Virus record (IMG/VR): IMGVR_UViG_3300037805_000644
Span: 124,001 to 188,000 of that record
Reading direction: 5' to 3' (one strand)
Length of the DNA: 64,000 nt
Shown here: in pieces, positions 31,970 through 63,999 of the stretch
Layout of the letters: every line of letters starts with the position of its first letter
Numbering within the stretch: the first letter of the stretch is position 1
Notes under the pieces: generated by a model
The model's database searches: none
The model's input: only the letters and a program-made list of their open reading frames with translations
Told to the model about the DNA's origin: nothing
Position numbers and translations under genes: made by a program

Positions 31970-33301
31970 TCAACCCCACTTAGACTCAGCCATCTCCAGC
32001 AGCGCACTGTACTTGTCGCCGTAAGGGTCGCGTTTCCGACGCACCCCCTTTTCCAATCGTGCTATCTGAGGCAGATTCAGGATGTCGCCGGTCAAGGCGA
32101 CATAATCACCGCTGGCATCCGCCTCAGCCTGACGGATGAGGTTCCACTCCAGGGTGTCGCCATAACCCTCACCGACATAGATCGGCTTACCGTCATCCCG
32201 AGCCATTTGGAGAGCGATGGCCGTGGCGAGCTTGTCGTGCCCCCGGTCATAATCAATGGTGTACAGGAACGACTTACCAAGGGAGTCTCGGAAAAACCCG
32301 TACGCGTAGATGTACTGGTCATCGGGGTCATCCAGGAAAGCTTGATCGTACACCGCGAATACAGGGTGGTCCACCAAGACCAGCATCTTCGAGGTGACTT
32401 TCTTCTCCTCCACCACCACAGCCCTGGGCTTCTTACCGGGCAACCCGGCCAGGATCTCCTTGACCTTGGCCATAGGCAGCCTCCCCGCCCGCACCAACTC
32501 GGAGTACCAGCCGTTGGAGAGGAACTGACGAACTCGGTCAGCCCACAGCCGGAGAGCGTTTGCCTGACCCCGAGGGGTGAATCCACCGGAAGGCGTGTGA
32601 GGGTTCCACCGGTACCAGAGCTTACCGATGATTTGGCCCAGCCCCCTACCTCGGTACTCCTGAGCCACCACTAGGAGAGTGGCACCCCATTCGTCCTGAG
32701 CAGAAGCCACCTTCAAGCCGCCCGAGTTGAGGACCACAATGGAGGCACGCTCGCCCTTCTTCAAAGTACCCTCAGCGCGAACCTGGCAAGGCTCACCCTG
32801 GACGAGGATATTCTGCAAGAGCACCGGGTTCGCGGCCAGGTTGTTCCTGGCTATATTGCTGACCAGGGCGGCAGCTTCCGTGATGTATTTGACGACCTTG
32901 CGGCGCTTCACCTCAAAGTAAACCACTGCTAGGTTGCTCAGGTAGCTCTCGGGAAACTTCGAGCCCGACCACTTGTCGTGGTAAAGGGTGCCTCGGTGGA
33001 TCACCCCGATCACCTGCTCCTTTTCCTTGAGCAGGATCCCTTCTCGGTTCCCCCACACACCCAACCCCTCCCCCAGCATACCGGTTTGACCGAGGTGCCT
33101 GAGAGAGTGGTCCTTATTCATCTGCTGGAGGTCCCAGTCGTAACTCTCAGCCTCGTGGGACTCCCCCTTAGGGTTACGGAGGGTGAGGAATTCTGCCCAA
33201 GTCAGAAGACCCGGCTCCGTCGTCTCGAATTTGTCAGGTAGGGGTGTGGTCGCTGACACACGGGTAAGCCAGCGGCAGGCTAGGCGGTGGGCTGGGGTCA
33301 T
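31970..33301 (-). CDS. GNAT acetyltransferase-domain protein
   Basis: VVAQEYRGRGLG (motif A), SGGFTPRG; AGGAGG RBS before ATG 33301; class II motif at 33327-33341. Confidence 0.7.
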   Translation of the reverse strand: MTPAHRLACRWLTRVSATTPLPDKFETTEPGLLTWAEFLTLRNPKGESHEAESYDWDLQQMNKDHSLRHLGQTGMLGEGLGVWGNREGILLKEKEQVIGVIHRGTLYHDKWSGSKFPESYLSNLAVVYFEVKRRKVVKYITEAAALVSNIARNNLAANPVLLQNILVQGEPCQVRAEGTLKKGERASIVVLNSGGLKVASAQDEWGATLLVVAQEYRGRGLGQIIGKLWYRWNPHTPSGGFTPRGQANALRLWADRVRQFLSNGWYSELVRAGRLPMAKVKEILAGLPGKKPRAVVVEEKKVTSKMLVLVDHPVFAVYDQAFLDDPDDQYIYAYGFFRDSLGKSFLYTIDYDRGHDKLATAIALQMARDDGKPIYVGEGYGDTLEWNLIRQAEADASGDYVALTGDILNLPQIARLEKGVRRKRDPYGDKYSALLEMAESKWG

Positions 33302-33348
33302 GGGATCCTCCTGTTGGGGATCAACCATAGAGGGGATACCGGCAGCCC

Positions 33349-35826
33349 TTAGGGGCGGGACACCGAGAAATACTCACCCTTCACCGAAACACTGAGGAGC
33401 AACCCACCCCCCAACTGGAAAAAGGTGCCCTCTTCCTTCTCAGCCTTGTTCAGCTTGATGCCGGGGATGTCCTCAGCGATCTGCTCGGCCGTCCGTGCCT
33501 GTGCTGCGAAGCTCTCTGGGACCAGCCCTGTGGATCCGACATAGAAAGCGACAGGCACGACCCGCTCGATGTACAGATTGGAGACGGCCCGGTTCACTGC
33601 CTTCTCGGCTGAGGTCAGGATCGCAACCGCATCCTCCACGTCCTCACAGCCGCCCTGGATGGCCCAGAGGAAATCATGGCGTGCATCAGCATCGAGACCC
33701 GCCTCTTCGAGAGCCCCTGTGAGGTGCAGGGGGCTCTCCAACCCCAGGAACTCCGCGTACAGGGGGTAACTCAAGGCATCCACAGCATCGAGCTTCGTGC
33801 GGGCACTGAGAGACTTGATGCCCCAGACCACATCCAACGGAGGATCCCCGGCCATCGTCTGGTTCTGCATGAACAGCGCCAGGGTGGGCTTCTTCACGGC
33901 CTCCCCGGCCACCGTGGCGGTGAACCGACGCTGGAGGTATGCATTGCCCGACTTGAGCTTGCCCAGATTGGTGATGTCCCCCGTGCCGATCTCCACCTTG
34001 TAAGACAGGCGGGTGTCGATGTCGCCCTTGGCGATGGCCTCCTTGAGATCCGCGTAAGGGGTGGTCGTAGGTGCCGCAAAATACATGGCCGGGCTGAGGT
34101 TGTACCCCTTGAGTTCGGCGATCTGATCCGGGCTGAGGCTGGTCGAGCTGTCCTTGAGGACCCCCGAAAGGATCTTGCTGAGGACCTGGAGCTTGGCCAG
34201 CTTGTCGAAGGTGTCTGCCGGGAGGTCAAATCCCTGATCGAAGTCCACCAAGGGGAGGTCCCCCAAGTTGATGGTCAACATCACCTGGGGGTCGAAATCC
34301 CCATCCACCACACCCAGCTTCTTGAGGGCCCGGAAGGCACGCTTATCACTGGTCTGGATGGGGAGCTGGGCCACGGTGACCTCACCGTCCCCAACCACCG
34401 TGTAGTTGCGGAAATCCTTGAGATCGAGAGGGATGCCCGCAACCTTGTGGATGGCCTCCCCCGTCTCCCGCTCCACCAGGTTGCAGTCCTGGGTCAGCTT
34501 GATGTTCGCTGTTGCCGTGTTGCGGTTGATGTCTACTGAGCTGATTTGGACATACCCGTCCTCATCGGCCTTGCGGTGCAGCGCATACTTCGGCTTGGTG
34601 ATCGTGCCGTCCTCGTTGCGGACCCCCGCGATCCGCTGAACCCCTCGGCGCTTGTACGTGCCCAAGAGGGTCGGGACGTGGACCCGGATGTGTCGGCTGT
34701 ACTCATTGAGGGTCTGGAGCACCGAGAGGACGGAGGGGCCCTCAAAGGCAAGACCGTAAGTGCTCCCGAGGGTGTCACCCGGCCAGTTCGGCGTGCGGAA
34801 AAGGTAGCTCTCCACTTCCTCGGCCATGCGGGCGACCGCAGTGGCTGTCAGTGCCTTGTAGTTGCGCTCCAGCAGCCCCTGCCACCGGCTGGACACCAGG
34901 GCAAACTTGGCAGCATTGAGATTGCCATCGGAGATCGCAGCTCGGGCGAACGCCACGGCCAGATCGTGGGCCGCCTCCTGCTCAATGCAGTCGAAAGCCT
35001 GCTTGTCGATCTCGTACAGCCGGTACGTCGTGGCCCAGCCGGCACCCAAGCCCCGGACGTTGATCGTCTCACTCGACCCAAGCACCTTCCGCCCACCGAG
35101 GCTCACAAACAGGACGTAGTCGGCATCGCCGATGCCCACCTCAACCGTAGGGCTCAGATCCCCAGCAAGGAGCTTCTGGGTGTCATAGAACGCCTGGTAG
35201 ACCTGCTTGATGTTCTTGGCCTGGATGCAGGTGCCCGAGAGCTGGTTGGCGATCCCGGCCAGGAGGTTGAAGTCCGCCCAGTCCCGGTAGGCAACCGTGT
35301 TGACGAACACGTTGGGGTGTGCCTTGAGGGTGTCCACCGCTTCCTGGATGGCCCGGTTCTCTCGGCTCGGGGAGCGGTCGTTGGCGTACCCGTCCGAGTG
35401 CAGCGAGATGCAGGTGATCTCACTGTCGTCGATCATCGTCTCAGCCTTGGCCAATCCCTGGCTGATGCAGGTGAGACCTCGTGTGCGGAGGTTACGGATC
35501 TCCTGAACCTGGGGAGAACCCACGCCCATGACCTGCTCAATGGGGGCACGCTCGAAGTGGACCTTGACATCCCCCATCGAACTGTACGTGACGAGGCTGA
35601 CCACCAAGCCGGGGTTGTTGAACTCATCGAGGGTCAGCACCTTCTCGACGGTCGCCTTGAGGTCCTTGAGGTCGTAGTACATTGACCCCGACACGTCAAA
35701 GACGAAAATGTGGTGTGCCGGGGCTGAGACGGGGGTGCTCCCTGCCTCGAACTTCTCGGACTCGACACGATAAAACTTGACCGGCTGGCCATTGAAATTG
35801 CGAAGTGCGAAACGGGTCTGGCTCAT
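33349..35826 (-). CDS. vWA (MIDAS) domain protein, 825 aa
   Basis: FVFDVSGSM, T of TCISQG, HSDG. Confidence 0.85.
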   Translation of the reverse strand: MSQTRFALRNFNGQPVKFYRVESEKFEAGSTPVSAPAHHIFVFDVSGSMYYDLKDLKATVEKVLTLDEFNNPGLVVSLVTYSSMGDVKVHFERAPIEQVMGVGSPQVQEIRNLRTRGLTCISQGLAKAETMIDDSEITCISLHSDGYANDRSPSRENRAIQEAVDTLKAHPNVFVNTVAYRDWADFNLLAGIANQLSGTCIQAKNIKQVYQAFYDTQKLLAGDLSPTVEVGIGDADYVLFVSLGGRKVLGSSETINVRGLGAGWATTYRLYEIDKQAFDCIEQEAAHDLAVAFARAAISDGNLNAAKFALVSSRWQGLLERNYKALTATAVARMAEEVESYLFRTPNWPGDTLGSTYGLAFEGPSVLSVLQTLNEYSRHIRVHVPTLLGTYKRRGVQRIAGVRNEDGTITKPKYALHRKADEDGYVQISSVDINRNTATANIKLTQDCNLVERETGEAIHKVAGIPLDLKDFRNYTVVGDGEVTVAQLPIQTSDKRAFRALKKLGVVDGDFDPQVMLTINLGDLPLVDFDQGFDLPADTFDKLAKLQVLSKILSGVLKDSSTSLSPDQIAELKGYNLSPAMYFAAPTTTPYADLKEAIAKGDIDTRLSYKVEIGTGDITNLGKLKSGNAYLQRRFTATVAGEAVKKPTLALFMQNQTMAGDPPLDVVWGIKSLSARTKLDAVDALSYPLYAEFLGLESPLHLTGALEEAGLDADARHDFLWAIQGGCEDVEDAVAILTSAEKAVNRAVSNLYIERVVPVAFYVGSTGLVPESFAAQARTAEQIAEDIPGIKLNKAEKEEGTFFQLGGGLLLSVSVKGEYFSVSRP

Positions 35827-35900
35827 CTGGTTTTCCCCTCATGGATGCCCTTCTTTTACTCTGCTGAGGGTTGAGGAAACCCCTCAAGGCTCAGAAAAAG

Positions 35901-39269: not shown

Positions 39270-39319
39270 GAAGCTCCCCCTTTGAGGGGATTACCCGGGC
39301 CGCTGAGACAGCGACCCCC

Positions 39320-45671: not shown

Positions 45672-47352
45672 GGGTACTCCTTCCTTTCAGCTCAAGATAC
45701 CGAGCTGCGAGGGTCCGAATCTCGACAGACGGGATGGTGTGTACAGTCCACACCTCACCGTTGATGAGCATATCGGAGAGATACCGAGGGTCAGGCGCCT
45801 CAGACCCACGCTTGTGGCGGGGTCGGGGGATGTCCCAATCCAGGCCGAGAGCATGATCGAGCACTGCAAGGACATGCTTGCAAACCCCATGCTCATGCAC
45901 AGGATCCTTGATCACGGGGAAGCTGGCCGTGCCCCGAGGCTTCCCATACAGGTAGCCGTTCTGCTTGGCCCAGTGCTCGGGCCCCTGCCAACGCCAGTAA
46001 GGGCAGTCGCAGGAAAGAAACACGTCAGCCTTGGACAGCCGTCGGGCATTGCCCTTGGTCTTGCCCTGAACCCGGACCCTGTAAGTACCGGAATTGCCGT
46101 TCACGTCGAAAAGCCACATCCCGTTGCGCTGGTCTACCTTCTTGAGCTTCCAGGTCAGGCCGGTCACCTTCTCCCGGATGCTGTCGTCCACACCCGACAT
46201 GATGTCGGAGATGCGGAAAGCGAACCTCCGACCCTCTTTATTTTGGAAATCGTGCCCCTCGGGGATGACCTTAGCGGACCCGGGGTTGTTCGTAACCTCA
46301 CCGAAATCGTTGAAGGTTTTCATCCCGGGGTTCCGCTTCTTTTTGCGCACCCGCTCTTTGCGGTCCGTGGCCCGGTCGTATGCCTGCCCTGGGGGGTCTT
46401 TGCGGTCCACCCGCTCATACAGCATCTCTGCGGTGTGCATCGCCTCTTGGTACCCTAGGGCCTTGTCCAGGTACCCGAAAAAGTAATCATCATCGATGAC
46501 GGCCTCGTCGAAAAACTCCACCAAAGGCCGGCTCTGGTACATGCCCCCCACCTGGAAAGTCACCCACCCTGTGAGCTGGGAGACGCCCATCACCACACCC
46601 CAAGCCTGAGTGGGGAGATGGTAAAACCCAACGGGGCGGAACAGCGCCTCAGCCTTCTTCTCGCCGGGCTTGTCTTTCCGGTTCTTCAACTTCTCGCGGT
46701 ACTCGGTCCCCCGCTGCTTGAGAGTGCTGGCCCCCCCAGGCTTGCGCTCGAACCTCTCAGGCTTCTCCTTTCGCCTCTCCTGGTCCCGCTGGTAGGTCCC
46801 CTTGTTCTTGGCCCGGGCATACCACCGCTCCATGCGGCTGCGTACCTTGCCCCGGTTTTTCTGGTACCACTTCTGGAAGTACCGCTTGGCCTGGCCACGC
46901 TGTTCTTTCTGTCGGTCGGACCCTGGGTAAGGCTTGCCCTGGGCCGCGCCCATGCGTTGAAGTACCGACAGGATCTCCTCCTGGGTGGGCATGATGGGAT
47001 CATAAAGCTGGGACTCCTCCTCGCTCTCCCCATACACGCCAGGTCGACGGGTGTTCATCCCTGGACCCGACTGGGCTGGAGAGCCCTTAGAGCCAGGGTG
47101 TTCACCCCCGGGCTCGCTTTGGGTGCGAGCCTTGTCCTTGTGGATGGACTTGTTGCCCTCACCTGTGCCGCTCGGGCCCGGGGTGTTGAAGTTGTGGGGG
47201 CCGCTCTTGGTCGTGTTGGTCCACTGAGGGCTAGGGAGCGCAGAAGGCTTCCTCTCATCCCTCCCCGGCACCGTGGGCTTGGTTCCCGGTGACGGATTCT
47301 TGACGACGGTACGGACCCCACTCAGGTCCTGGGAGCGGCTTGATGTCTTCAT
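45652..47352 (-). CDS. SWIM Zn-finger domain protein with disordered basic N-terminus
   Basis: SCDCPYW..CKHVLAV. Confidence 0.75.
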   Translation of the reverse strand: MKTSSRSQDLSGVRTVVKNPSPGTKPTVPGRDERKPSALPSPQWTNTTKSGPHNFNTPGPSGTGEGNKSIHKDKARTQSEPGGEHPGSKGSPAQSGPGMNTRRPGVYGESEEESQLYDPIMPTQEEILSVLQRMGAAQGKPYPGSDRQKEQRGQAKRYFQKWYQKNRGKVRSRMERWYARAKNKGTYQRDQERRKEKPERFERKPGGASTLKQRGTEYREKLKNRKDKPGEKKAEALFRPVGFYHLPTQAWGVVMGVSQLTGWVTFQVGGMYQSRPLVEFFDEAVIDDDYFFGYLDKALGYQEAMHTAEMLYERVDRKDPPGQAYDRATDRKERVRKKKRNPGMKTFNDFGEVTNNPGSAKVIPEGHDFQNKEGRRFAFRISDIMSGVDDSIREKVTGLTWKLKKVDQRNGMWLFDVNGNSGTYRVRVQGKTKGNARRLSKADVFLSCDCPYWRWQGPEHWAKQNGYLYGKPRGTASFPVIKDPVHEHGVCKHVLAVLDHALGLDWDIPRPRHKRGSEAPDPRYLSDMLINGEVWTVHTIPSVEIRTLAARYLELKGRSTHAPLQL

Positions 47353-47355: not shown

Positions 47356-48306
47356 TTACTTTCCCAGGTGTTTCTTCACGATATTCTGGATGCCGTGATT
47401 GTGGCTGTGAGGCAACACGCAGATGCCAGGGGCCTTCGGGTCAGGCATCCCTTTCCAGTACACGGTGATGATCCGGGCCGTCCTCTTGGACGGGACAGCG
47501 AACACCAGGAAGAGGTTCCATTTCTTGAAAAGGAACTCAATGGGCTCTCCCCGGCGGATGGTCATCATGGCGTGTTCGTACTCGTAACTCTTCTGACTTT
47601 TCCAGTCATTGAGGCTCTGGCCGAACTGTTTGAGGCCGACGCGGATATCCGGGATGCTGATCCCCCGCAGGTCCATGCGGTACTGGGCGTGGCTTGTCAG
47701 CTCGATCTGCTTGAACAACCCAGCACCTTGCTCCTTGAGCGGCTTGTAAACCACTCGGGCCTCCGGGTTGCTCAGGGACTTGCCTTCCTCTACCTTCTCT
47801 TGGAGGACATCACGCACCCGGGGTGAGCGAACCTTATCCTCGATACGGTTGACGACATAGCAGGGACCCGCCTCGGTGGGCAGACCCAAGGCGGGCATGA
47901 GGTCCGCCTGCTTGCCCACCCAAGCCGAGGATACCCTCTGAGAGGCGCTTTCCGACTCGGAGTTCCGATCCATCCCCCCGCCGAAAGCGGGGGATAGGGT
48001 CTCCTCGACGAGCTGCTTTTCGGAGAGAGGGAGACGGGCCCCCAGATAGCTCTCACCCATCTTGACGAGAGCCAGGGCAGTGCGATCCAACACCTGCTCC
48101 AGGGCATCCATGCGCTCAGGGGCGGCGATGATAATGTCGCCAGCCACCTCGAACAGGTGCTCTTTCTGATCCGAAGAGGAGATTAGCTTGCCTGCCCTGT
48201 TTACCAGGTGGCGGAGTCGGTGGGTGTCCAAACGAGCCTGGGTCACACCCTCAGTGATGAGGGCCCAGGCTGCTTGGGAACTGGCGGTTTTGTCGGTCTT
48301 GCTCAC
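47356..48306 (-). CDS. protein with C-terminal DUF4258 (RelE-like RNase fold) domain
   Basis: LTSHAQYRMDLRGISIPDI..IITVY; GTG start at 48306 with GGAG RBS; class II motif at 48352-48366. Confidence 0.65.
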   Translation of the reverse strand: MSKTDKTASSQAAWALITEGVTQARLDTHRLRHLVNRAGKLISSSDQKEHLFEVAGDIIIAAPERMDALEQVLDRTALALVKMGESYLGARLPLSEKQLVEETLSPAFGGGMDRNSESESASQRVSSAWVGKQADLMPALGLPTEAGPCYVVNRIEDKVRSPRVRDVLQEKVEEGKSLSNPEARVVYKPLKEQGAGLFKQIELTSHAQYRMDLRGISIPDIRVGLKQFGQSLNDWKSQKSYEYEHAMMTIRRGEPIEFLFKKWNLFLVFAVPSKRTARIITVYWKGMPDPKAPGICVLPHSHNHGIQNIVKKHLGK

Positions 48307-55403: not shown

Positions 55404-55435
55404 GTTTCACCTCACCAGGTGAGGGGTATAAACAA

Positions 55436-55468
55436 AAAACCCTGGCAGGTTGCCCTGCCAGGGGTTTT
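55436..55468. terminator. intrinsic terminator after the major capsid gene
   Basis: aaaaccctggcagg-ttgc-cctgccaggggtttt. Confidence 0.85.
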
Positions 55469-55512
55469 AATGGGTGTGCTCATCAGAGCCGCTGTCTAGC
55501 CTCTAAGGGCTA

Positions 55513-56385
55513 TTAGCGGGTGACGGTGAGGCGGGCCAACCCACGGGGGTTGTAGGCGCCGATACCCAGGTTCTCGAAGACCGAGAAACCGATGGTACGT
55601 GCCTTGGGGTCGTCGGCGCTGAGCACGGTCAGCTCGGTGCGGACCGGGATCCGACCGAAGTGCTCGGGCTCGCAGCACAGGTAGACCGTGCCGACGGGAA
55701 CCAGGCGGCTCACGACGATCTGGGCACCGTAGATGACGCCCATGAGACCAGTCTTGAGCAGGGTGCCCTGGGACTCGATGTCCAAGATGTCACGACCGAA
55801 CTTACGGATGTCCGCGTAGTCACGGGCGTTCATGTAGACACGAGCAACGCGGAGGTCCCAACGCTCGATGAGAGCGAAGGCATCAGCCAGGACCGCACCC
55901 GAGATGGGGGCGATGACCGGGATGTCCGGGTTGAGCTGACCAGGCAGCGAGTCGAAGCCCGCAGTGGCGATGGAGTCGAGCACGGCAAAGACGCGCTCAT
56001 CCTCGGCAGCCTGCACCTGGGCACGGGCCAGGTCCTGAGCACGCTCAATCAGATCGAAGCGGCGCTCCTTGATCTGGGTGAGCGGGATCTCCGGGTTCGA
56101 GGCAATCTCGAACAGGGGGAAGATCACACGACGAGGCTTGGTGATGGCCAGGATGTTCTGACCTTCCTCACCAATCACGAATGCGGTCACATCCGGGTCT
56201 TTGTCGTAGATCGGCAGGGCCCCGTCAGGAAGCTGCTCGACCAGGAAGGTCTTGCGGCCGACTGCGGCGTAGTCACGCCGGGTACGGAGGGGCTGCGTCA
56301 TACTGGCAGCGAGCTTGGCCCGTCCCTGGGGGGACTGGATCAGCTCGCCGATGAGGCGTTGCTTGACGGCGTTTGTAACGGCCAT
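55513..56385 (-). CDS. major capsid protein (HK97 fold)
   Basis: KLAASMTQPLRTRRDY..FLVEQLPDGALPIYD, PLFEIASNP, GFSVFENLGIG; gene order protease-scaffold-decoration-MCP; strong RBS. Confidence 0.88.
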   Translation of the reverse strand: MAVTNAVKQRLIGELIQSPQGRAKLAASMTQPLRTRRDYAAVGRKTFLVEQLPDGALPIYDKDPDVTAFVIGEEGQNILAITKPRRVIFPLFEIASNPEIPLTQIKERRFDLIERAQDLARAQVQAAEDERVFAVLDSIATAGFDSLPGQLNPDIPVIAPISGAVLADAFALIERWDLRVARVYMNARDYADIRKFGRDILDIESQGTLLKTGLMGVIYGAQIVVSRLVPVGTVYLCCEPEHFGRIPVRTELTVLSADDPKARTIGFSVFENLGIGAYNPRGLARLTVTR

Positions 56386-56413
56386 GATTTTATCTCCTTG
56401 AACCCGTCAGGGA

Positions 56414-57121
56414 TCAGACGCGCTGGTCGTAGACCAGCTCGTTCTGGGTTGCGTCAGGTGCCATCTTGAGCACCGCGAGGGTGGTCACGGCGGCGGCACC
56501 GAGGCCACCTGCGTGGACGAAGCCTTCGGCACTCTCGGCGGCAACGGCATCCAACGCCTGGAGGGCGGCGGCGCCATCGACGATGCGACGGGGCTGGAGG
56601 TAACCATTGCGGCTGGCCATGAGGCGCATACCGGCGATGTACGTCAGGGCAGCACCCTGGGCATCCGCACCGATGGCGTTCTGGAGCTGCGTCTCAAACA
56701 GGCCGTTGGCATGGGTGCCCTGGCTGCTGAGGTAGGTGTTCTTACCGCTGGCGGTACCAGGGGTGTTCTCGAAGGCATTGCCGTTCACCGAGTTGATGAA
56801 CACACCCAGAGCGCGGTAGCCGATCTCCTGGGCGTTGGCTGCCGCGATGGCGGTCTGCGTGGCCGCATCACCCGGGCCGCCGATCATGTTCTCGCCAGCA
56901 TCGGGGCGCACAAAGGCGACCGAGCCAGAGAGGACACCGACGAGGGTGCTGTCGACCTGCTGAGAGGTGGTGGTCCCAGCGACGGGATCCACAACGGGGT
57001 TGGCCTGGATGAACGAGTCGGCTGTCATGACGCCGGTTGCGTTCCGTACACCAATGTGCAACGGGCGCAGCGCCGAAGACGACTCGGTCCAACCACCACT
57101 GGCCTGTCCGAGAAGGGGCAT
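56414..57121 (-). CDS. putative head decoration/minor capsid protein
   Basis: Immediately upstream of MCP; class II motif at 57242-57256. Confidence 0.6.
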   Translation of the reverse strand: MPLLGQASGGWTESSSALRPLHIGVRNATGVMTADSFIQANPVVDPVAGTTTSQQVDSTLVGVLSGSVAFVRPDAGENMIGGPGDAATQTAIAAANAQEIGYRALGVFINSVNGNAFENTPGTASGKNTYLSSQGTHANGLFETQLQNAIGADAQGAALTYIAGMRLMASRNGYLQPRRIVDGAAALQALDAVAAESAEGFVHAGGLGAAAVTTLAVLKMAPDATQNELVYDQRV

Positions 57122-57269
57122 AGTGTCCTCCATTCTCCTGTTTACAGGAGGGTGAGTCTCAAAGGGCTACCCCCCAACAAGGAGGACAGCGGCAAGCTGG
57201 AAGGGCTCCCAGACCGGGGCCTTCACTGAATAGGGGGAGGGATAGACGCTCTATTGAGAACCCCCCCCT

Positions 57270-57307
57270 AAAAAAGTAAAGCCCACCCGATTTCTCGGAT
57301 GGGCTTT
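57270..57307 (-). terminator. intrinsic terminator after scaffold gene
   Basis: aaagcccacccga-tttc-tcggatgggcttt with T-tract on minus strand. Confidence 0.75.
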
Positions 57308-57343
57308 AGAGGCCGAAACGGGGTTAGAACCCCCGGCTGGGGG

Positions 57344-58828
57344 TCAGACGCCGAACACCTTGCTCACGTCGGGGGCGGACTTCCAGAGCTTTTCCAGCAT
57401 ATCCACCGAACCCGGGGCCGCCGAGGCGACGCGAGTCTGGTTCCCAAGGGCGGTGACGCCGTTGCTGGCCTGGCGGGGCTGAGGGGACAGCTCCAGCTCT
57501 TCACCGGCCGTGTGGCCAGGGAGACCGGCGGAGAAAATCTCCTCCAGCAGCTCTTCGTCGGCAGCGGAGAGGGACATGCTGCTGCCCCCACTCAGGCCCA
57601 TGGGGTCATGGCCAGCCGTGTCGAACAGGTTGGCAGCCTTGTCGGCACCATCCTCGTCGTCGTCCTCGTCGCCGTCGTCAGTGGCCTTCTTGCCAGCTTC
57701 GACCGCGTCGTCGTCCTCATCCTCGTCGTCGCCTGCCTTCTTCTTCTTGAGGAAGTCGGGGAACTTGTCGTCCTTCTTGTCGTCCTTCTTGTCGTCCTTC
57801 TTGTCGTCCTTCTTGTCGCCCTTGTCCCACTGCTTCTTGAAAGCTTCGGGGACCTCACCGGCCAGGACCATCTCGCCACAGGCGCTCATCATCCCGACTT
57901 CATCGTCCATGAAGTCGTCAGCCATGCCCATCATCTCATCCGAGGGGTCGAACATGGCGGTGATCAGCTCACCCGAGGTGACCACACCGTCAGAGTCGGT
58001 GTCCACGGCGGCGAAGAGCGCCTTCGATCCGGTCCAATCGTCGGCCAGGGCAAACCCGTCCTCACCACCACCATGGGTGGCGAAGTAGCTGGCAACTCGC
58101 CCCTGGAGGCTGGCGAAACGGGCCGAACCCTTCTTCTCGCCCTTGGCGGTGGAAGACGCCTCAGCACGCTCCTGCTCCTTCGGATCGTTCTGGCTGGCGG
58201 TGATCTGAGCCTTGAGGCCACGGATCTCGGAGGCCATGTGCTGCATCATGGACATCATGTCGTCGCCGGGGGCGCCAACATCGAGATCGTCATCCATGCC
58301 GAACATGTCGTCATCCATGCCGAACATCTCGTCGCCCATGTCGTCCATGTCGTCGCCGAGGAACATGTCATCATCCATGGCCAGGAAGCCGCCACCGACG
58401 CGCTTGAGGCTGGCCGCAAGGTACGAGTTGGGCAGATCCATCATGTCGAGGGCCTGCGACTCAACCAGATCCTGCGTCGCATTCTTGCCGAGCTGATGCT
58501 TGGCGAGAACGAGGCACTTGGCGGCCTTGCGCTGGATCCCAGCAGACAGCTTGGCATCCTTCTGAACCCGGGGGTTCCGCTTGTGCGCCGGGTGGTCACC
58601 ATCCTCGGTGTCGTAGCCGGGAACTGCCGGGGGGTTACCCTCGGGGTACGGGCCCTGGTGGACATCCTCGGCCCAAGCCGAGGTGTCGCCCTTTTGGTAC
58701 TTCTCGTAGGCAGGATCGGCCTGGTGGGCCGGGTGGCCCTGGTCTTCCTTGCCGTAACCGGGAACTGCGGGTGCGGCAGACGCCTTACGGTCCGTCTTGC
58801 TCCACGTCGTGCGAGTGCGATTGCTCAT
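57344..58828 (-). CDS. putative capsid scaffolding protein, acidic low-complexity, with EF-hand motif
   Basis: Between protease and capsid genes; GAGGAG RBS before ATG 58828; DTDSDGVVTSGE loop. Confidence 0.7.
   Translation of the reverse strand: MSNRTRTTWSKTDRKASAAPAVPGYGKEDQGHPAHQADPAYEKYQKGDTSAWAEDVHQGPYPEGNPPAVPGYDTEDGDHPAHKRNPRVQKDAKLSAGIQRKAAKCLVLAKHQLGKNATQDLVESQALDMMDLPNSYLAASLKRVGGGFLAMDDDMFLGDDMDDMGDEMFGMDDDMFGMDDDLDVGAPGDDMMSMMQHMASEIRGLKAQITASQNDPKEQERAEASSTAKGEKKGSARFASLQGRVASYFATHGGGEDGFALADDWTGSKALFAAVDTDSDGVVTSGELITAMFDPSDEMMGMADDFMDDEVGMMSACGEMVLAGEVPEAFKKQWDKGDKKDDKKDDKKDDKKDDKFPDFLKKKKAGDDEDEDDDAVEAGKKATDDGDEDDDEDGADKAANLFDTAGHDPMGLSGGSSMSLSAADEELLEEIFSAGLPGHTAGEELELSPQPRQASNGVTALGNQTRVASAAPGSVDMLEKLWKSAPDVSKVFGV
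57767..57822 (-). repeat. 12-bp coding tandem repeat (KKDD)n
   Basis: gtcgtccttctt repeated about 4 times. Confidence 0.8.
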
Positions 58829-58859
58829 CGTGGTTCTCCTCTGGCGCTCTGCCAGGTCT

Positions 58860-60317
58860 TTACTGTTGTCCCCGAAGGGCCTGGCCCCTTCGGGACATGA
58901 TAGAGCCGAGCCGCAGGAACTTCCTGGCCTCAACTGGATTGGGCTGACGCCCAAAGGCGGAGGCGCAAGCCCCCAGAAAATCTCTGCCGGTACTGTACCG
59001 ACTGGTCGGGCCTGCACTCAGTGCTGCCCGGTATAGGTCTCGATCAACACTAATGCCGGCTGCCTTATCCAGAGCCGCCACGCCCTCAACGAGGGCGATA
59101 TCGGTGCTGGCAATGCGAGTGAGGACACCTACGGCGGCCTCACGCTGGATGGTGTCATTCGGGGCGGTCGAGTCGCCAACGGACTTGGACAGGTCTCGGC
59201 CCCGCATCTCATCTTTGATGCGCTTTTTCACACGCTGCTGCATGTGCTCGGTCAACTCATCCTCGGTCTCATCGAGCGGGGATTTCTTCTCCGCAGGGGG
59301 GGCTTCACCACCCTCCTCAGCAGCGGGGGCATCCCCTTCTTCATCATCCCAGCCGGCGAGGAAAGCATCACCGCCCAGGGAGGCGCCTGTGTGCGTCGCA
59401 CGAGCAGCACGCTGCATCTGGTCCGCATTCCACTCCGGCGGTGGGGTGTTCAGCACCTTGGCAGCCTTGTCGAGCATGGCCTGAGTCGGCTCCAACACAT
59501 TCCGCAGGACTGCTCCCGTGAACGCGGGAGTCTCTACCCAGCTCGCCTCGATGAACCGGACACCGCCCGTGGGGTCGATGCTCTCATGGCCACACAGCTC
59601 TGCAATCCGATGCTGGCGACCCAGCTCATCGAAAAATGCGGTGCCTTTGGCGTACTTGATGTGAGAACACATCTCGGTTTCGTCAGCGGCCCAGTGCCCG
59701 CAACGGGTGCAGACCGTGCCGTCCACGGTGCAACCCATGGACATCGTGGCCATCTTGCCGGACGTGATGGCCTTAACCAACTCGGTGTGCTTGCGGTCCG
59801 TGGCCACCAGAATGTCGATGTAGATCGAATCCCCGATGTCCCGAGCCACTGCATCAATGATGCGGCCCTTGGACTGCTCCTCAATCTGTACGTGCTCGAC
59901 GAAATTGTGCCCACCCACAAACGTCTCAAATGCCTTGAGCAGGACGGGCCGGCTCCAGGCATCGAGGTTGTTGTTGATGAATTTGTCGCAGCTCTGGCGG
60001 ATACGGTACTCGGCGTAACGGCGGTTGACCCGGAAGCCCCCCTCCATGACATGACCGAGCCTCACCCCTTGCGGAGACTCCACATCCACCGAGGCCACGA
60101 TAGTGGCATGGGTGAGCAGGAAGTTCTCAGGGTTGAAGGGCTTGCCCAAGATTTGGGTAGCCCGCTCCACCAGGTTGGAGGACATCGCCACCTTGGTCGG
60201 GCGAAAGGATGAGGCAACCTTCCCGTGCTGCTTAGCGGCGGCTCGGACATTGCCCCATTGCTCTTTCCTGATGGAAGGGGTGGCAACACTGGCGTATGCA
60301 TACTTCATCAAAGGCAT
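58860..60317 (-). CDS. prohead (capsid maturation) protease with Zn-binding insert
   Basis: NNNLDAW, NFVEH, KGRIIDA, MSMGC..CTRCG..CSH, FIEASWVETPA. Confidence 0.8.
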   Translation of the reverse strand: MPLMKYAYASVATPSIRKEQWGNVRAAAKQHGKVASSFRPTKVAMSSNLVERATQILGKPFNPENFLLTHATIVASVDVESPQGVRLGHVMEGGFRVNRRYAEYRIRQSCDKFINNNLDAWSRPVLLKAFETFVGGHNFVEHVQIEEQSKGRIIDAVARDIGDSIYIDILVATDRKHTELVKAITSGKMATMSMGCTVDGTVCTRCGHWAADETEMCSHIKYAKGTAFFDELGRQHRIAELCGHESIDPTGGVRFIEASWVETPAFTGAVLRNVLEPTQAMLDKAAKVLNTPPPEWNADQMQRAARATHTGASLGGDAFLAGWDDEEGDAPAAEEGGEAPPAEKKSPLDETEDELTEHMQQRVKKRIKDEMRGRDLSKSVGDSTAPNDTIQREAAVGVLTRIASTDIALVEGVAALDKAAGISVDRDLYRAALSAGPTSRYSTGRDFLGACASAFGRQPNPVEARKFLRLGSIMSRRGQALRGQQ

Positions 60318-60319
60318 GA

Positions 60320-60940
60320 TTACATCCCCCCCATCATGCGCTGGCGGGCCAGCCGGATGCCGGAGAACGGCTGAGGGGCAGGCCCCGCAGCATCCGCATC
60401 GAAGTAATCAGGGTGACCCATGATATCGCACTTCTTCACCAGGAACATGCACTCAGGGCACCCGAGTAGCTTCTCCCGGGCTCCATCACGCATCTTGTAA
60501 GCAGCAGGGCGGAGACACCCCATCTTGCATTTGGGGCAGGTGTAACTGCCCGTATCAAGCTCTGCTTTTGTAGCCCTGTAATTGCGGTTCTTGGCCGCCC
60601 AATACAGAGACTTTTTGACAAAAGCCTGGGCAACTCGAAGAGAGCTGGCTGCCTTCGGCCCACCGGGGACAGACACGGTTCCGGCCCCACCGGGGACGTT
60701 GTCGTGCTCTGCCTTTGGCGGGATAAGATCTTTGGGTTCGTAACGCCCCAGCTCTTCAACTGGGTAACGCTCACTCCCGTGAGGCCACTCAACATCGACC
60801 ATGCCGATAGCAGGGTAAACCGCCACGACACGACCGCTGTTTTCGTAGTTGCCGCTCATGAAAGGATACACCAGGTCACCGACCCCAAACTCTGAGGCCC
60901 GCTGCTGAAAATCCACGTATGCCGAGCGGTCTTTACTCAC
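60320..60940 (-). CDS. head-module protein with SH3-like and Zn-ribbon parts
   Basis: FGVGDLV..GRVVAV..VDVEW; CPKC..CPEC. Confidence 0.6.
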   Translation of the reverse strand: MSKDRSAYVDFQQRASEFGVGDLVYPFMSGNYENSGRVVAVYPAIGMVDVEWPHGSERYPVEELGRYEPKDLIPPKAEHDNVPGGAGTVSVPGGPKAASSLRVAQAFVKKSLYWAAKNRNYRATKAELDTGSYTCPKCKMGCLRPAAYKMRDGAREKLLGCPECMFLVKKCDIMGHPDYFDADAAGPAPQPFSGIRLARQRMMGGM

Positions 60941-60954: not shown

Positions 60955-61533
60955 TCAGGCGTACAGGTTGAAGCCGTGGGCCTTCTTGCCGGACTCTTTC
61001 TCGTCGCCCTCATCCTCATCCTCATCATCCTCAGCAGACTTGACGATCTGGGAGGCAAGGCGTAGAGCTTTGGCAACCCGGGCCTCCTCGGCGAAGCTGA
61101 GGTTGGTGCTCTGGAGAGCAGCCACGAGGCTCAGGAAGCTGGCTTGGACGCCGGCCCGTGCGGGCTGCTCCGCCATGCTCGGAGCAGCAAGGTTGCCACC
61201 CTCCACTTCCTCGCGAAGCTCCCGGTTCTCCTGCTGGGAGAACTGGCCGCCCATGTAACCGGACTCGTCGCCGTCACCCTCAAGAGGACCGCCATCCTCC
61301 CGGCCGATCTCCGAGGGATCGAAGTCAGCGTTCTTGACCTCACCCCCCTCGTCACGCTCAAGGCCAGCGGTGACCTCAATGCGGTCCGAGAGGAGGTCGC
61401 AGCGGTGGGCGAAGTCAGCAGCGATTTTCTCGGGGATCCCGAGTGCTGCGTGCTCTGCCTGAATGAGGGTGGCAACGCGATCCAAAGCGGTAGAAGCCTG
61501 GAAAGCGCCCTTCTTGGTGATACGGTTGGGCAT
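60955..61533 (-). CDS. acidic head-module protein
   Basis: AGGAG RBS; class II motif at 61615-61629. Confidence 0.65.
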   Translation of the reverse strand: MPNRITKKGAFQASTALDRVATLIQAEHAALGIPEKIAADFAHRCDLLSDRIEVTAGLERDEGGEVKNADFDPSEIGREDGGPLEGDGDESGYMGGQFSQQENRELREEVEGGNLAAPSMAEQPARAGVQASFLSLVAALQSTNLSFAEEARVAKALRLASQIVKSAEDDEDEDEGDEKESGKKAHGFNLYA

Positions 61534-61671
61534 GTCTTCGTTCTCCTGTTCCGTCAGGGCCTCAGCGGGATGACAGCTCGGGCGTTGAATGCCCTTCGCT
61601 GATATGGGCTGGGTATAGACGAACGATTGAAAATCGGTGGTTGTAACCCGGTTTACCAGGTCGGTTAAAGT

Positions 61672-63999
61672 TCACGACTTCTTACCTTTACCCTTACCGC
61701 CCGGCCCCACCTTTCTGCCGTCGTTGTGGGCCTCAACCTTCTGGTCAAGGACATCCACCTCGCCTGTCTCACAGACGTGGCGCACACGGGCGACCTGGGG
61801 GTTCAGCTTGTCCGGCGCCTTACCTGTCACCTTCTCGGCGGCGGCGTATGTAGCGCACATGTCCGTCACCTGGAGAGAGTCTGCACCGCCCTTGCATTTC
61901 TCCAGCTCTGCCTGAGTGGTTGCCTTGGCAATGCAGCCTGCCAGCTTGTCGACCGCGTCCTTGAGGGTGCGGTCATTGCCTTTCTCGGCACGTACACGCT
62001 CCGCCAAATCCTCAGGCTTTGTGGTGGGGGCTCCCTTTTCGGGCTCGTCTCCACCACCGCCAAGAGAGTTGAGGAAACCTTGCATGGTGGTCATGTCGTT
62101 GACTGCCAGCATCTTGAGCAGATCTCGGGCGAAAGCTCTCTGCTCTCCGCCCATCAGGTTGTCCTCCCCCTCATCCAGGAGGGCGGCCCCGATGGGCCCA
62201 TATGCGGTGTCCTTGCTGGCGACCACCTCTACCAGATCGGCGTCCGGTAGCGAGTCCAGCGCCTCACGCACCCTAGAGCGTCCCTCAGGCCCGTAAATCT
62301 CAGACCCACCCCGGAGTAGCAGACTATGGTCCCCCTGGGCTGCTAGGGCCTGTGAGAGCACCTGGAAGCTCTTGGAGACCTCATCGGCACCGGGGAGTTG
62401 GCGACCTTGCACTGAGGCAGCTAGAACCATCCCAGACTTGATGGCGTCCAGCTCAATGAACTCGTCGGACTCTGGGTCCAGGTTGCTCAACTGATCTTCA
62501 AGCTTCCGGGCAGCGACATCCATCAGCTCTGTGCCAGCCTTGAGGAACTGCCGGAAAGCATCCTCAGCGCGAGATTGGAGCTGATCAGCGGACTTGGTGC
62601 TGTCGTTGATTGGCACCCCACCCACCAAAGAGGGATCGGACACCACCTGCCGGGCGAACACGTACTCGGCCAGCATCTCTGCCTGAGCCTCTAGGCTCCT
62701 GTCCCCTAGGCCCTTGAGATCCTGCTTGAGTGCCTTGTTGGCGGCCTTGAACGCCTCGGCCCGGAGCCCGTCAGCAGTGAACCGACCTTCCCGAAGCTGG
62801 CTCATATGGGCAGTGTATGCCTCCGCCAGAGCAGCGGCTCCCTTCTCATCCAAATCTCGAATCAGTCGATCTGCGTCCCGAGGGAGATCCTTGGTGACCT
62901 TGCTGAAATCGTCGAGCTGACGCTCATGTTTGGCCCGCTGTTTCTCCCGAGCCTTGCCTCGGTCAGCTTTTTCCTGCTCGGCAGCGGCCTCAGGGTCGGG
63001 CTCCTCTTCCTCAGACTTGCGGTTGCCCTCGGCCATCCGCTTGGCGGCGGGCTCATCCGTGGCAGAGGTGGGCTGCTTGGCGCCCGGAGGCCAGACCCCC
63101 CACCCGTTTCGGGTTTGCCAGTAATCGCCCTCTTTCTTGTCAGCGTCTGGGGCGACCCGAGCTGCGATCCTGGTGGCCGTGGCACTGCCCCACCCGCCGA
63201 CCCGCACGGCTGCGTCCTGGGCCTTCAAGTGCGTGTGGACCCCCTTGAGGATGATCTGCTTGTTCCTCGGGGTCAGGTACGGCTCGATGTCTGGCCACTT
63301 GGAGTCCTTCAACGCCTCCCTGACGGCCATATTGAAACCCATGCCGTAACCCATGAACTCTTGAACGGAGTCCCCCACCTGGGTCACCACATCGCGCATC
63401 AGCGCCCGGACCTCTGCGGGGTGGTTGTGGTGGTGCCGCTTCAAATCTTCCATTGACCCGGAGAGATCACCCGCCGAACCCTTGCCAGACCAAACGTCTG
63501 CCGCGTGGGTCAACTCATGGGCGAGGAGACGGTACAGCTCATCCTCGATGATCCGAGTGGGACGTTGCTCGAACGACCGAAGGTAAGGGTTGACGAACAC
63601 CCTCATCAGCGGACCCTCCCCACGGCGCTTGAGGAAGCCCCCGTGAAGCAATTCGTTGTTGAACGGGTCAGGGTGCCTGCGTGGGGATCCCGTCAACAGG
63701 ATCTCCACATCAATCTCATTGCCCAGGACGTTGGTGATGTACAGATACTCCTGAGCAACCACCTGACCTGGCCTGGGGAGCCCCCGCTGGCGGAGTTGTA
63801 GGGCCAGCTTCTTGGAGAGGGCCTTGATCTCCCGAGTGGGCAACCGGATGGGACGGGCCGCCTGTTTGGTGGAGGCGAGATCTCGGCCCTTGGGGGCGTC
63901 GTCAGGGTTGACCACACGCACGACTTCAAGGGCACGAGGGTCGTAGGTCTGGTTGCCCACTGTGGACTGCCAACCCTCCATCCAGAAACCCACAGCGCC
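61672..63999 (-). CDS. large protein with zincin HExxH domain, 5'-truncated by window edge
   Basis: LLAHELTHAAD..HPAEVRA; frame open to the window end. Confidence 0.65.
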   Translation of the reverse strand, partial: GAVGFWMEGWQSTVGNQTYDPRALEVVRVVNPDDAPKGRDLASTKQAARPIRLPTREIKALSKKLALQLRQRGLPRPGQVVAQEYLYITNVLGNEIDVEILLTGSPRRHPDPFNNELLHGGFLKRRGEGPLMRVFVNPYLRSFEQRPTRIIEDELYRLLAHELTHAADVWSGKGSAGDLSGSMEDLKRHHHNHPAEVRALMRDVVTQVGDSVQEFMGYGMGFNMAVREALKDSKWPDIEPYLTPRNKQIILKGVHTHLKAQDAAVRVGGWGSATATRIAARVAPDADKKEGDYWQTRNGWGVWPPGAKQPTSATDEPAAKRMAEGNRKSEEEEPDPEAAAEQEKADRGKAREKQRAKHERQLDDFSKVTKDLPRDADRLIRDLDEKGAAALAEAYTAHMSQLREGRFTADGLRAEAFKAANKALKQDLKGLGDRSLEAQAEMLAEYVFARQVVSDPSLVGGVPINDSTKSADQLQSRAEDAFRQFLKAGTELMDVAARKLEDQLSNLDPESDEFIELDAIKSGMVLAASVQGRQLPGADEVSKSFQVLSQALAAQGDHSLLLRGGSEIYGPEGRSRVREALDSLPDADLVEVVASKDTAYGPIGAALLDEGEDNLMGGEQRAFARDLLKMLAVNDMTTMQGFLNSLGGGGDEPEKGAPTTKPEDLAERVRAEKGNDRTLKDAVDKLAGCIAKATTQAELEKCKGGADSLQVTDMCATYAAAEKVTGKAPDKLNPQVARVRHVCETGEVDVLDQKVEAHNDGRKVGPGGKGKGKKS

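What the first reader, a model, noticed from the sequence alone, without database searches (positions are those of the whole stretch)
31970..63999. Unrelated effector proteins share an RVAxx[FWY]-like motif with head proteins: candidate capsid cargo-loading signal
Seen: similar short helical motifs at domain boundaries: GNAT protein N-terminus HRLACRWLTRVSA (~33251-33289), SWIM protein C-terminus RTLAARYL (~45691-45717), DUF4258 protein QRVSSAWVGKQA (~47905-47940), scaffold GRVASYF (~58082-58102), 60320-60940 LRVAQAFVKKS (~60608-60640), zincin protein TRIAARVA (~63151-63174). The GNAT and DUF4258 genes have their own class II motif. Knowledge: T4 internal proteins use a short capsid-targeting sequence; ART, GNAT, zincin and RelE-like domains recur in phage polyvalent proteins. 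Inference: a modular tag that loads diverse enzymes into the head for injection.
Basis: partly seen in the sequence, partly recalled or inferred. Interest (0 to 1): 0.8.

Follow-up and report, generated by a model that had tools for sequence, protein, structure and literature searches.

The report
Portable RVAxRYL peptide tag, huge phages
A short helical peptide (consensus R-V-A-x-R-Y/W-L) is attached to the ends or domain junctions of many unrelated accessory enzymes in a clade of huge phages, most likely as a shared docking tag that may load them into the head; this function is untested, and the core head proteins do not carry the tag.

Summary
All six peptides are at the stated coordinates on the minus strand. 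Inside the window the signal is modest: a matrix built from other phages gives 3 hits against 0.5 expected.

Relatives make it decisive. In about 80 related loci, R[VIL]Ax[RK][FWY] occurs 66 times on the coding strand against 4.6 expected. It ranks first of 720 permutations of its own elements. Synonymous codons vary freely, so selection acts on the protein.

Four of the six instances are true or degenerate copies of this tag: the GNAT-like N-terminus, the SWIM-signature C-terminus, the hairpin/DUF4258 protein and the polyvalent zincin protein. The 60320-60940 helix is a conserved variant. The scaffold RVASYF is chance.

The tag sits after disordered linkers at N-termini, C-termini or domain junctions. 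Its carriers look like counter-defence enzymes: topoisomerase IB, RNA ligase, PAP2, SAM-lyase-like, 2H phosphoesterase, zincin and RelE-like domains.

MCP, decoration, scaffold and protease families never carry it (0 of 201 members).

My best reading is a portable docking tag for loading cargo into the prohead, analogous to the T4 capsid targeting sequence. Confidence is 0.45. No virion data exist for this clade.

The parts
33266..33286 (-). Canonical tag RLACRWL at residues 5-11 of the GNAT-like protein. The gene is 31970-33301 with its start at MTPAH.
   Evidence: The database protein P0001 is identical to the window protein and begins MTPAHRLACRWL. About 16 of 54 homologues begin with M-x(3-30)-R[VI]AxR[WY]L-x-AATTPLP. 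Three longer fusions carry the tag at the junction instead.
45694..45717 (-). Near-canonical C-terminal tag (R)TLAARYL, 19 residues from the stop of the SWIM-signature protein 45652-47352.
   Evidence: This is the top matrix hit in the window at 15.5 bits. Nine of 18 orthologues have a strict tag, and those at the C-terminus lie 11-43 residues from the stop. A CxC...CxH signature starts at residue 448. Pfam gave no hit.
47917..47937 (-). Degenerate tag RVSSAWV. It lies between the helical-hairpin domain and the DUF4258 (RelE-like) domain of the gene 47356-48306, whose start I revise to the GTG at 48306.
   Evidence: Alignment A3 shows the order domain, 'AFGG', 8-25 residue variable linker, R[VL]AxRYL. 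105 of 119 database clusters carry the tag. The DUF4258 hit has E = 2.3e-4. The start codon and ribosome-binding site were read.
60617..60637 (-). Tag-like helix RVAQAFV in the conserved head-module protein 60320-60940. This variant has Ala instead of Arg at position 5.
   Evidence: Column identities are R 0.90, V 0.79 and A 0.86 across 30 orthologues. The AlphaFold model shows a beta-barrel at 10-66, a disordered segment at 71-92, a helix at 97-110 with pLDDT 50-62, and a zinc-ribbon domain at 120-170. The relaxed tag is present in 21 of 29 members.
63151..63171 (-). Degenerate tag RIAARVA inside the polyvalent protein 61672 to beyond 64000. The full 1569-residue protein is at L004:5-4714.
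   Evidence: It aligns with the canonical 'SLNYKRIALRWL' of L051 and is followed by the shared GE.WQT..GW block. The full-length protein also has a canonical HRVASRWLGK near residue 73 and two HExxH motifs, just outside the window.
58082..58102 (-). Scaffold GRVASYF. This is not a tag. It is the entering helix of a degenerate EF-hand.
   Evidence: It is conserved only in the nearest relative, L006. Other orthologues read FFASMDTD or MFDAFDSD at this position. The relaxed tag occurs in 0 of 46 scaffold orthologues.
55834..55851 (-). MCP RVARVY. This fits the title motif, but I judge it unrelated to the tag.
   Evidence: It is invariant in a protein that is 88% conserved overall, and it has Val rather than Arg/Lys at position 5. 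Tunturi_5 reads TVAYIF at this position. The MCP was identified through phage G gp27 and the Tunturi_5 major head protein.
55513..60317 (-). Core head-assembly genes that lack the tag: MCP 55513-56385, decoration-like protein 56414-57133, acidic scaffold 57344 to about 58828, and prohead protease 58860-60317.
   Evidence: Identified. The scaffold C-terminus (LSxLWESAPDVSxVFG) and the C-terminal domain of the protease (RTASSD...) are conserved but differ from the tag.

Best explanation
The motif R-[VIL]-A-x-[RK]-[YWF]-[LMIV] is a portable short linear docking motif. It forms a two- to three-turn basic amphipathic helix held on a flexible linker. This clade of huge phages (MCP related to LR745208, Tunturi_5 and phage G) has attached it to many unrelated accessory enzymes and to the modules of a giant polyvalent protein.

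Inferred, not shown: all tagged proteins dock to one common phage partner in the assembling prohead. Candidates are the acidic scaffold core, the inner shell surface, or the 60320-60940 protein. Docking would get them packaged and later injected with the DNA. This would make the tag a functional analogue of the T4 capsid targeting sequence, the P1 DarB N-terminal signal and encapsulin cargo-loading peptides.

Shown here: the motif is real, it is selected at the protein level, it is modular, and it sits in a linker-helix arrangement.
For: Reality of the motif:
- 66 occurrences against 4.6 expected on the coding strand, and 2 against 2.0 on the antisense strand.
- Rank 1 of 720 element orders.
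- All synonymous codons are used at background frequencies.
- The tag is kept in genomes of 47% and 63% GC.

Modularity:
- At the N-terminus of the GNAT-like family in about 16 of 54 homologues, at junctions in 3 fusions, and absent in Atu_ph07 gp377 and other homologues.
- 9-17 residues from the C-terminus in 94 of 119 hairpin-family clusters. About 11 more have several different extra domains after the tag.
- C-terminal in 9 of 18 SWIM-signature proteins.
- One to five copies between domains of polyvalent proteins.

Structure:
- AlphaFold places the tag as a separate low-confidence helix after a disordered linker in two families.

Kind of cargo:
- Carriers include topoisomerase IB, RNA ligase, PAP2, two zincin motifs, DUF4258, a SAM-lyase-like protein and a 2H phosphoesterase.
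- Iyer et al. (PMC5512222) assign these classes to polyvalent proteins that they predict are packaged in capsids.

Location:
- In the window every supported instance lies in the late minus-strand block that holds the head genes, and none lies in 1-31970.
- The polyvalent gene sits directly upstream of the protease, scaffold and MCP genes.

Precedent:
- Portable capsid-targeting peptides exist in T4 (PMC3012670, PMC7411985) and P1 (PMC9024508).
Against: - No virion proteome or structure exists for any member of this clade.
- The scaffold and the protease, which must themselves enter the prohead, lack the tag and have their own conserved C-terminal elements.
- The tag can be N-terminal, C-terminal or internal, unlike the N-terminal, cleaved T4 signal.
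- In LR745208, N-terminally tagged genes lie at 201.7 kb and 462.9 kb, whereas the MCP is at 396 kb.
- Tagged GNAT-like genes in two other phages sit among replication and metabolism genes.
- Phage G and Tunturi_5, the cultured relatives, lack the tag, so their virion knowledge cannot be transferred.
- No receptor was identified. The EF-hand pair in the scaffold does not co-occur cleanly with the tag.
Confidence: 0.45

Rival explanations
1. The tag docks proteins to a common hub that has nothing to do with the capsid. The hub could be a phage or host factor met in the infected cell, such as a replication or transcription compartment, a chaperone or a nucleic-acid complex. On this view the tag gathers accessory enzymes at one site rather than packaging them.
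For: - The same evidence for a linker-held modular motif applies.
- Tagged genes can lie far from the head genes and among non-structural genes.
- The core head proteins lack the tag.
Against: - The densest tag carriers are the polyvalent protein, the hairpin and SWIM-signature pair and the 60320 protein. All are encoded within 10 kb of the MCP in dozens of phages.
- Phage polyvalent proteins are predicted to be capsid cargo (PMC5512222).
Confidence: 0.2
2. The motif is a recognition or cleavage site for a maturation protease, either the prohead protease 58860-60317 or the polyvalent protein's own zincin domains. Cleavage would cut polyvalent proteins into separate modules and trim terminal peptides. 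This could act alone or after targeting, as in T4, where the capsid targeting sequence is removed after entry.
For: - The motif lies at domain junctions of polyvalent proteins, often as LSLNYK-RVAARW.
- Iyer et al. propose autoprocessing by the metallopeptidase domains (PMC5512222).
- The T4 and SPN3US targeting propeptides are cleaved.
Against: - The motif is predicted helical rather than extended.
- In most hairpin and SWIM-signature proteins it lies only 9-17 residues from the C-terminus with nothing downstream to release.
- The obligatory protease substrates (scaffold, protease, MCP) lack it.
- No conserved small or acidic residue flanks it.
Confidence: 0.15
3. The motif is a junction marker of polymorphic-toxin type, like VENN or the Rhs DPxGL motif. 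It would separate a constant carrier domain from exchangeable C-terminal modules and would be kept because it aids module swapping.
For: - About 11 of 119 hairpin-family clusters carry several unrelated extra domains right after the tag.
- The DUF4258 domain is fused after the tag in the window, but in L027/L034 it is at the N-terminus of the next gene.
Against: - About 90% of hairpin proteins end just after the tag.
- The tag also occurs at extreme N-termini.
- Codons are not conserved, so there is no DNA homology to recombine on.
Confidence: 0.07
4. The motif is chance or composition: an Ala/Arg-rich proteome with helical periodicity gives RVAxx[FWY]-like strings.
For: - The generic helical pattern [VIL]Axx[FWY] is itself about twice as frequent as in shuffles (25 against 13.5).
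- The scaffold instance is chance.
- The window-only statistics are modest.
Against: - 66 against 4.6 on the coding strand, with an antisense control of 2 against 2.0.
- Rank 1 of 720 permutations.
- The tag is conserved at homologous positions while the flanking sequence varies.
Confidence: 0.02

Closest known systems
T4 capsid targeting sequence (CTS) of the internal proteins IPI-III and Alt
   Same: It is a short peptide shared by otherwise unrelated proteins that are injected and often act against host defence. It is portable, and it directs proteins to the prohead core (PMC3012670, PMC7411985).
   Different: The T4 CTS is strictly N-terminal, about 10-20 residues long and removed by gp21. 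Its sequence is unrelated. The motif here occurs at N-termini, C-termini and internal junctions. Cleavage and targeting have not been shown for it.
P1 DarB N-terminal packaging signal
   Same: It is a targeting signal on a giant polyvalent anti-restriction protein. The first 30 residues are enough to load a reporter into the capsid (PMC9024508).
   Different: It is a single N-terminal signal on one protein and depends on other Dar proteins. It is not a consensus motif reused across many families.
Encapsulin cargo-loading peptides
   Same: They are short conserved peptides on a flexible linker at a terminus of diverse cargo enzymes, and they bind the interior of an HK97-fold shell (PMC7355545).
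   Different: Encapsulins are not viruses. Their peptides are Gly/Leu/Ile-rich and extended. A receptor pocket is known there and unknown here.
Phage polyvalent proteins (Iyer et al. 2017)
   Same: The 1569-residue protein at 61672 to beyond 64000 and its orthologues string together zincin, topoisomerase IB, RNA ligase, PAP2 and RelE-like modules. They sit next to the head genes (PMC5512222).
   Different: My term search of that paper turned up no shared inter-domain or terminal peptide. The tag also occurs on single-domain proteins.
Propeptides of ejection proteins in SPN3US/phiKZ-like giant phages
   Same: Many head-internal proteins are thought to be targeted to the prohead by removable segments (PMC7411985).
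   Different: Those propeptides are long (about 110-130 residues), N-terminal, and defined by a cleavage motif rather than a docking helix.

Membership tests
T4-type capsid targeting sequence | N-terminal position within the first 10-20 residues of the precursor | tested here: not met
   The tag is N-terminal in the GNAT-like family, C-terminal in the hairpin and SWIM-signature families, and internal in polyvalent proteins.
T4-type capsid targeting sequence | Removed by the prohead protease at a defined site after targeting | not testable with these tools
   This needs virion mass spectrometry. No conserved flanking cleavage motif was seen.
T4-type capsid targeting sequence | Shared by unrelated injected proteins and portable between them | tested here: met
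   At least seven unrelated carrier families were found. The same families occur without the tag in other phages.
T4-type capsid targeting sequence | Sufficient and necessary for incorporation into proheads | not testable with these tools
   This is experimental. No cultured member of the clade is known. Phage G and Tunturi_5 lack the tag.
Encapsulin-type cargo-loading peptide | Short conserved peptide separated from the cargo domain by a flexible linker | tested here: met
   The linker varies from 8 to 25 residues. The linker has pLDDT below 50 and is followed by a separate helix.
Encapsulin-type cargo-loading peptide | Binds a pocket on the lumenal face of the HK97-fold shell protein | not testable with these tools
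   Only single-chain prediction was available, so no complex model could be made.
Prohead-protease cleavage motif | Present in the obligatory substrates (scaffold, protease, MCP) | tested here: not met
   0 of 46 scaffold, 0 of 40 protease and 0 of 59 MCP orthologues carry the tag.
Polymorphic-toxin junction motif (VENN-like) | Marks the boundary between a constant N-terminal part and variable C-terminal toxin domains | tested here: inconclusive
   This holds for about 11 of 119 hairpin-family clusters and for the window protein. About 90% have nothing after the tag, and some tags are N-terminal.
Polymorphic-toxin junction motif (VENN-like) | Sequence kept at the DNA level so that it can serve recombination | tested here: not met
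   All synonymous codons are used at background frequencies.
Phage polyvalent protein (Iyer et al. 2017) | Several effector or enzyme domains in one polypeptide, including a zincin-like HExxH peptidase, encoded beside the head and packaging genes | tested here: met
   L004:5-4714 encodes 1569 residues with two HExxH motifs. Orthologues carry topoisomerase IB, RNA ligase and PAP2 domains. The gene lies directly upstream of the protease, scaffold and MCP genes. Pfam did not recognise the zincin domains themselves.

The most novel reading that the evidence does not exclude
RVAxRYL is a universal, position-independent cargo-loading peptide of a widespread clade of huge phages. Any protein that carries it, at either end or between domains, is docked to one prohead partner, packaged, and injected ahead of the genome. 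If so, the injected anti-defence arsenal of hundreds of uncultured megaphages could be read directly from sequence. The 7-9 residue tag could also be used to load foreign proteins into very large capsids. One specific candidate mechanism is that the SH3-like barrel of the 60320-60940 protein, or the acidic, Met-rich, EF-hand-bearing scaffold, binds the basic amphipathic helix much as calmodulin binds its targets.
Probability: 0.4. Interest if true: 0.85.

Novelty: new variant of a known kind. Interest (0 to 1): 0.7.

Why it matters
Huge phages encode hundreds of accessory proteins of unknown deployment, and almost none of these phages can be cultured.

A sequence tag that marks one functional cohort would turn an open question into a list that can be read from metagenomes. 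The question is which proteins are delivered with the DNA to disarm the host. The tagged cohort consists of enzymes that look like counter-defence tools.

The finding also offers a compact, naturally portable peptide for testing protein loading into very large capsids.

Even if the partner proves not to be the prohead, the motif is of interest. It is a clade-wide short linear motif reused on at least seven unrelated protein families, which is rare in phage biology. It was absent from the searchable literature.

Tried and rejected
- **Exact five-residue pattern ranking by protein cluster.** Off-frame Arg-rich ORFs dominated at first. After that, single-linkage clustering merged the multidomain carriers. 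I replaced this with the permutation control.
- **Whole-genome census in LR745208.1.** Only four or five plausible tags were found in 485 kb. This relative (MCP 83% identical) uses the tag sparingly, so module enrichment could not be tested there.
- **Phage G and Tunturi_5 head modules.** Neither has the tag, so no virion data can be transferred.
- **A shared motif in the scaffold C-terminus or the protease C-terminal domain.** Both are conserved but differ from the tag.
- **The EF-hand pair in the scaffold as receptor.** It is present in 26 of 45 orthologues, but tags also occur in phages whose scaffolds lack it.
- **Stop-codon read-through after the tag.** The in-frame sequence after the stop looks non-coding, so I rejected this.
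- **A DNA-level element.** Rejected.
- **Fold searches with the two AlphaFold models, and a PDB sequence search with the protease.** No significant match.
- **Pfam confirmation of the domain names.** Pfam does not confirm 'GNAT', 'SWIM' or 'zincin'. These names rest on JGI's name for some homologues, a CxC...CxH signature and HExxH motifs.
- **The internal 'ERVAxxY' of the SWIM-signature family.** It overlaps a family-specific conserved helix (ADFLYEK), so I did not count it as a tag.


Full report
**What the window is.**
- The window comes from IMG/VR contig IMGVR_UViG_3300037805_000644, which is 222,939 bp long (locus L004 is 100% identical).
- The ORF 55513-56385 (minus strand) is the major capsid protein. 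It is 83% identical to the MCP of the uncultured 485-kb phage LR745208.1, 49% to the annotated major head protein of Tunturiibacter phage Tunturi_5, and 38% to Bacillus phage G gp27.
- Upstream of the MCP, on the same strand, lie these genes:
  - a decoration-like protein, 56414-57133;
  - a very acidic scaffold, 57344 to about 58828;
  - a prohead protease, 58860-60317 (phrog_18299);
  - a zinc-ribbon protein, 60320-60940;
  - an acidic protein, 60955-61533;
  - a polyvalent protein that runs off the window.
- The polyvalent protein is 1569 residues long in L004:5-4714 and has two HExxH motifs.
  - 'GNAT' is JGI's name for some homologues.
  - 'SWIM' rests on a CxC...CxH signature.

**The observation.**
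- Inside the window the evidence is only moderate.
  - The title pattern RVAxx[FWY] occurs 4 times against 0.32 in residue shuffles.
- Those four hits are the scaffold, 60320, the MCP and a 71-residue ORF.
  - Hydrophobic spacing typical of helices is generally over-represented ([VIL]Axx[FWY], 25 against 13.5).
- A scoring matrix built only from other phages gives three hits of at least 9 bits in 31970-64000 against 0.51 expected. It gives none in 1-31970 against 0.45 expected.

**Relatives settle it.**
- I fetched 80 MCP-anchored loci with 10-kb flanks and aligned orthologues of each carrier. This revealed a much sharper consensus, R-[VIL]-A-x-[RK]-[YWF]-[LMIV].
- On coding-strand ORFs, R[VIL]A.[RK][FWY] occurs 66 times against 4.6 in shuffles. 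On the antisense strand it occurs 2 times against 2.0.
- To correct for choosing the pattern after seeing the data, I counted all 720 orderings of the six elements in a codon-model-filtered gene set. The true order ranks first, with 48-50 distinct sequence contexts. The median is 1 and the 95th percentile is 7.
- At the motif positions all six Arg codons and all four Ala codons occur at background frequencies.
- The tag is found in genomes of 47% and 63% GC.
- Selection therefore acts on the peptide, not on a DNA element.

**Instance by instance.**
- *GNAT-like protein (31970-33301).*
  - RLACRWL is canonical and begins at residue 5.
  - Of 54 database homologues, about 16 begin with a short leader, the tag, and then a conserved AATTPLP segment.
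  - Three longer fusions carry the tag at the junction with an extra N-terminal domain.
  - Many homologues lack the extension altogether, among them Agrobacterium phage Atu_ph07 gp377.
- *SWIM-signature protein.*
  - TLAARYL is the positional orthologue of canonical C-terminal tags such as RVAARYL and RIARRYLE.
- *Gene 47356-48306.*
  - I revised the start to the GTG at 48306.
  - RVSSAW is the degenerate orthologue of the C-terminal tag of a helical-hairpin family of about 130 residues.
  - In that family, 105 of 119 database clusters have the tag. In 94 of them it lies 9-17 residues from the C-terminus.
  - About 11 clusters have extra domains of several different kinds after the tag.
  - The window protein is one such fusion, with a DUF4258 domain.
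- *Polyvalent protein.*
  - TRIAARVA aligns with 'SLNYKRIALRWL' of L051 and is followed by a shared GE.WQT..GW block.
  - The same protein has a canonical HRVASRWLGK near its N-terminus, just outside the window.
- *60320-60940.*
  - RVAQAFV is conserved in its family but has Ala at position 5.
- *Scaffold.*
  - RVASYF is seen only in the nearest relative. Elsewhere this position is the entering helix of an EF-hand. It is chance.

**Who carries the tag and who does not.**

| Family | Members with the tag |
|---|---|
| SWIM-signature | 9 of 18 |
| Helical hairpin | 23 of 31 |
| 60320-60940 (relaxed pattern) | 21 of 29 |
| Polyvalent protein | 11 of 17 |
| MCP | 0 of 59 |
| Decoration protein | 0 of 56 |
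| Scaffold | 0 of 46 |
| Prohead protease | 0 of 40 |

- Seven other neighbouring families also have no tag.
- The scaffold and the protease each have their own conserved C-terminal element, LSxLWESAPDVSxVFG and an RTASSD-containing domain.
- The claim that effectors share the motif with head proteins is therefore not supported.
- Further carriers in relatives are topoisomerase IB, RNA ligase and PAP2 modules of polyvalent proteins, a DUF3293/SAM-lyase-like protein, and a LigT/2H phosphoesterase with a weak Acb1 match.

**Structural context.**
- AlphaFold models built with family alignments show the same arrangement in two families.
- In the hairpin protein there is a confident hairpin (pLDDT about 95), a linker at 106-114 (pLDDT below 50), and then a separate helix at 115-127 that is the tag.
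- In 60320-60940 there is a beta-barrel at 10-66, a disordered segment at 71-92, the tag helix at 97-110 (pLDDT 50-62), and a zinc-ribbon domain.
- Alignment A3 shows a linker of 8-25 variable residues before the tag.
- This is the anatomy of a short linear docking motif.

**Interpretation.**
- Shown:
  - the motif is real;
  - it is selected at the protein level;
  - it is portable between unrelated families;
  - it is held on linkers;
  - it is specific to this capsid lineage, since the head modules of phage G and Tunturi_5 lack it.
- Inferred: it docks its carriers to one partner in the prohead so that they are packaged and injected.
- In favour of that inference:
  - The carriers match the classes that Iyer et al. 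assign to polyvalent proteins, which they predict to be capsid-packaged (PMC5512222).
  - The main carriers sit next to the head genes.
  - Portable capsid-targeting peptides have clear precedents in T4 (PMC3012670, PMC7411985) and P1 DarB (PMC9024508).
  - Encapsulin cargo-loading peptides work in the same way (PMC7355545).
- Against it:
  - There are no virion data for this clade.
  - The scaffold and the protease lack the tag.
  - The tag has no fixed position in its carriers.
  - Tagged genes can lie far from the head module.
- Confidence in each explanation:

| Explanation | Confidence |
|---|---|
| Packaging tag | 0.45 |
| Docking to a hub that is not the capsid | 0.20 |
| Protease recognition or cleavage site | 0.15 |
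| Polymorphic-toxin-like junction marker | 0.07 |
| Chance | 0.02 |

**Novelty.**
- No paper in the searchable library contains RVAARY, RVAARW or related strings.
- My term search of the polyvalent-protein paper turned up no shared inter-domain peptide.
- I class the finding as a new variant of a known kind, the portable capsid- or compartment-targeting peptide. It has a new sequence, occurs in a new clade and can occupy unusually varied positions.

Noticed in passing
window 57968-58003 (-) and the scaffold orthologues in L008-L083: The acidic scaffold protein contains a canonical EF-hand loop (DTDSDGVVTSGE). In 26 of 45 orthologues at least one such loop is present, and most of these have a pair spaced 23 residues apart (MDTDGDGF...LDTDGDGI). 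A calcium-binding EF-hand pair in a phage scaffolding protein is unusual.
   Followed up: partly
window 20545-21564 (-): This 339-residue protein matches Pfam Volactin (PF25216) end to end with E = 3.4e-69. It is an actin-like protein encoded by a huge phage.
   Followed up: no
window 33329-33400, 35827-35900, 39270-39350, 41114-41200 and 49761-49830 (read on the minus strand): A short palindromic element of the type CCCT(C/A)AAGGG recurs just upstream of several minus-strand genes, including the GNAT-like gene.
   Followed up: no
window 55404-55512 (-): A strong intrinsic-terminator-like hairpin (CCCTGGCAGGG...CCTGCCAGGG followed by TTTTTTGTTT) lies directly downstream of the MCP gene.
   Followed up: no
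window 47356-48471 (-): The mechanical ORF starts too early. Orthologues and a GGAG ribosome-binding site place the start at the GTG at 48306, giving 316 residues. The DUF4258-like domain is fused after the tag here, but in L027/L034 it sits at the N-terminus of the next (SWIM-signature) gene. Modules therefore move across the tag boundary.
   Followed up: yes
L004:5-4714 (the window polyvalent protein extended past base 64000): The polyvalent protein is 1569 residues long with two HExxH motifs (HELGH and HELTH). It has a conserved basic-acidic segment ending in DLSLNFK. In orthologues this segment reads DLSLNYK and directly precedes a canonical tag.
   Followed up: partly
window 6521-9397 (+), 10134-11576 (-), 37499-38191 (-) and 38547-39269 (-): Other recognisable genes in the window are a helicase with five HA domains (PF03457), a Ros/MucR-type zinc-finger regulator, a dCMP deaminase and a MazG pyrophosphohydrolase.
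   Followed up: no
L053:1785-5795 and L058:570-5384: In some relatives the homologue of the small acidic protein 60955-61533 is fused to the C-terminus of the polyvalent protein. This suggests the two act together.
   Followed up: no
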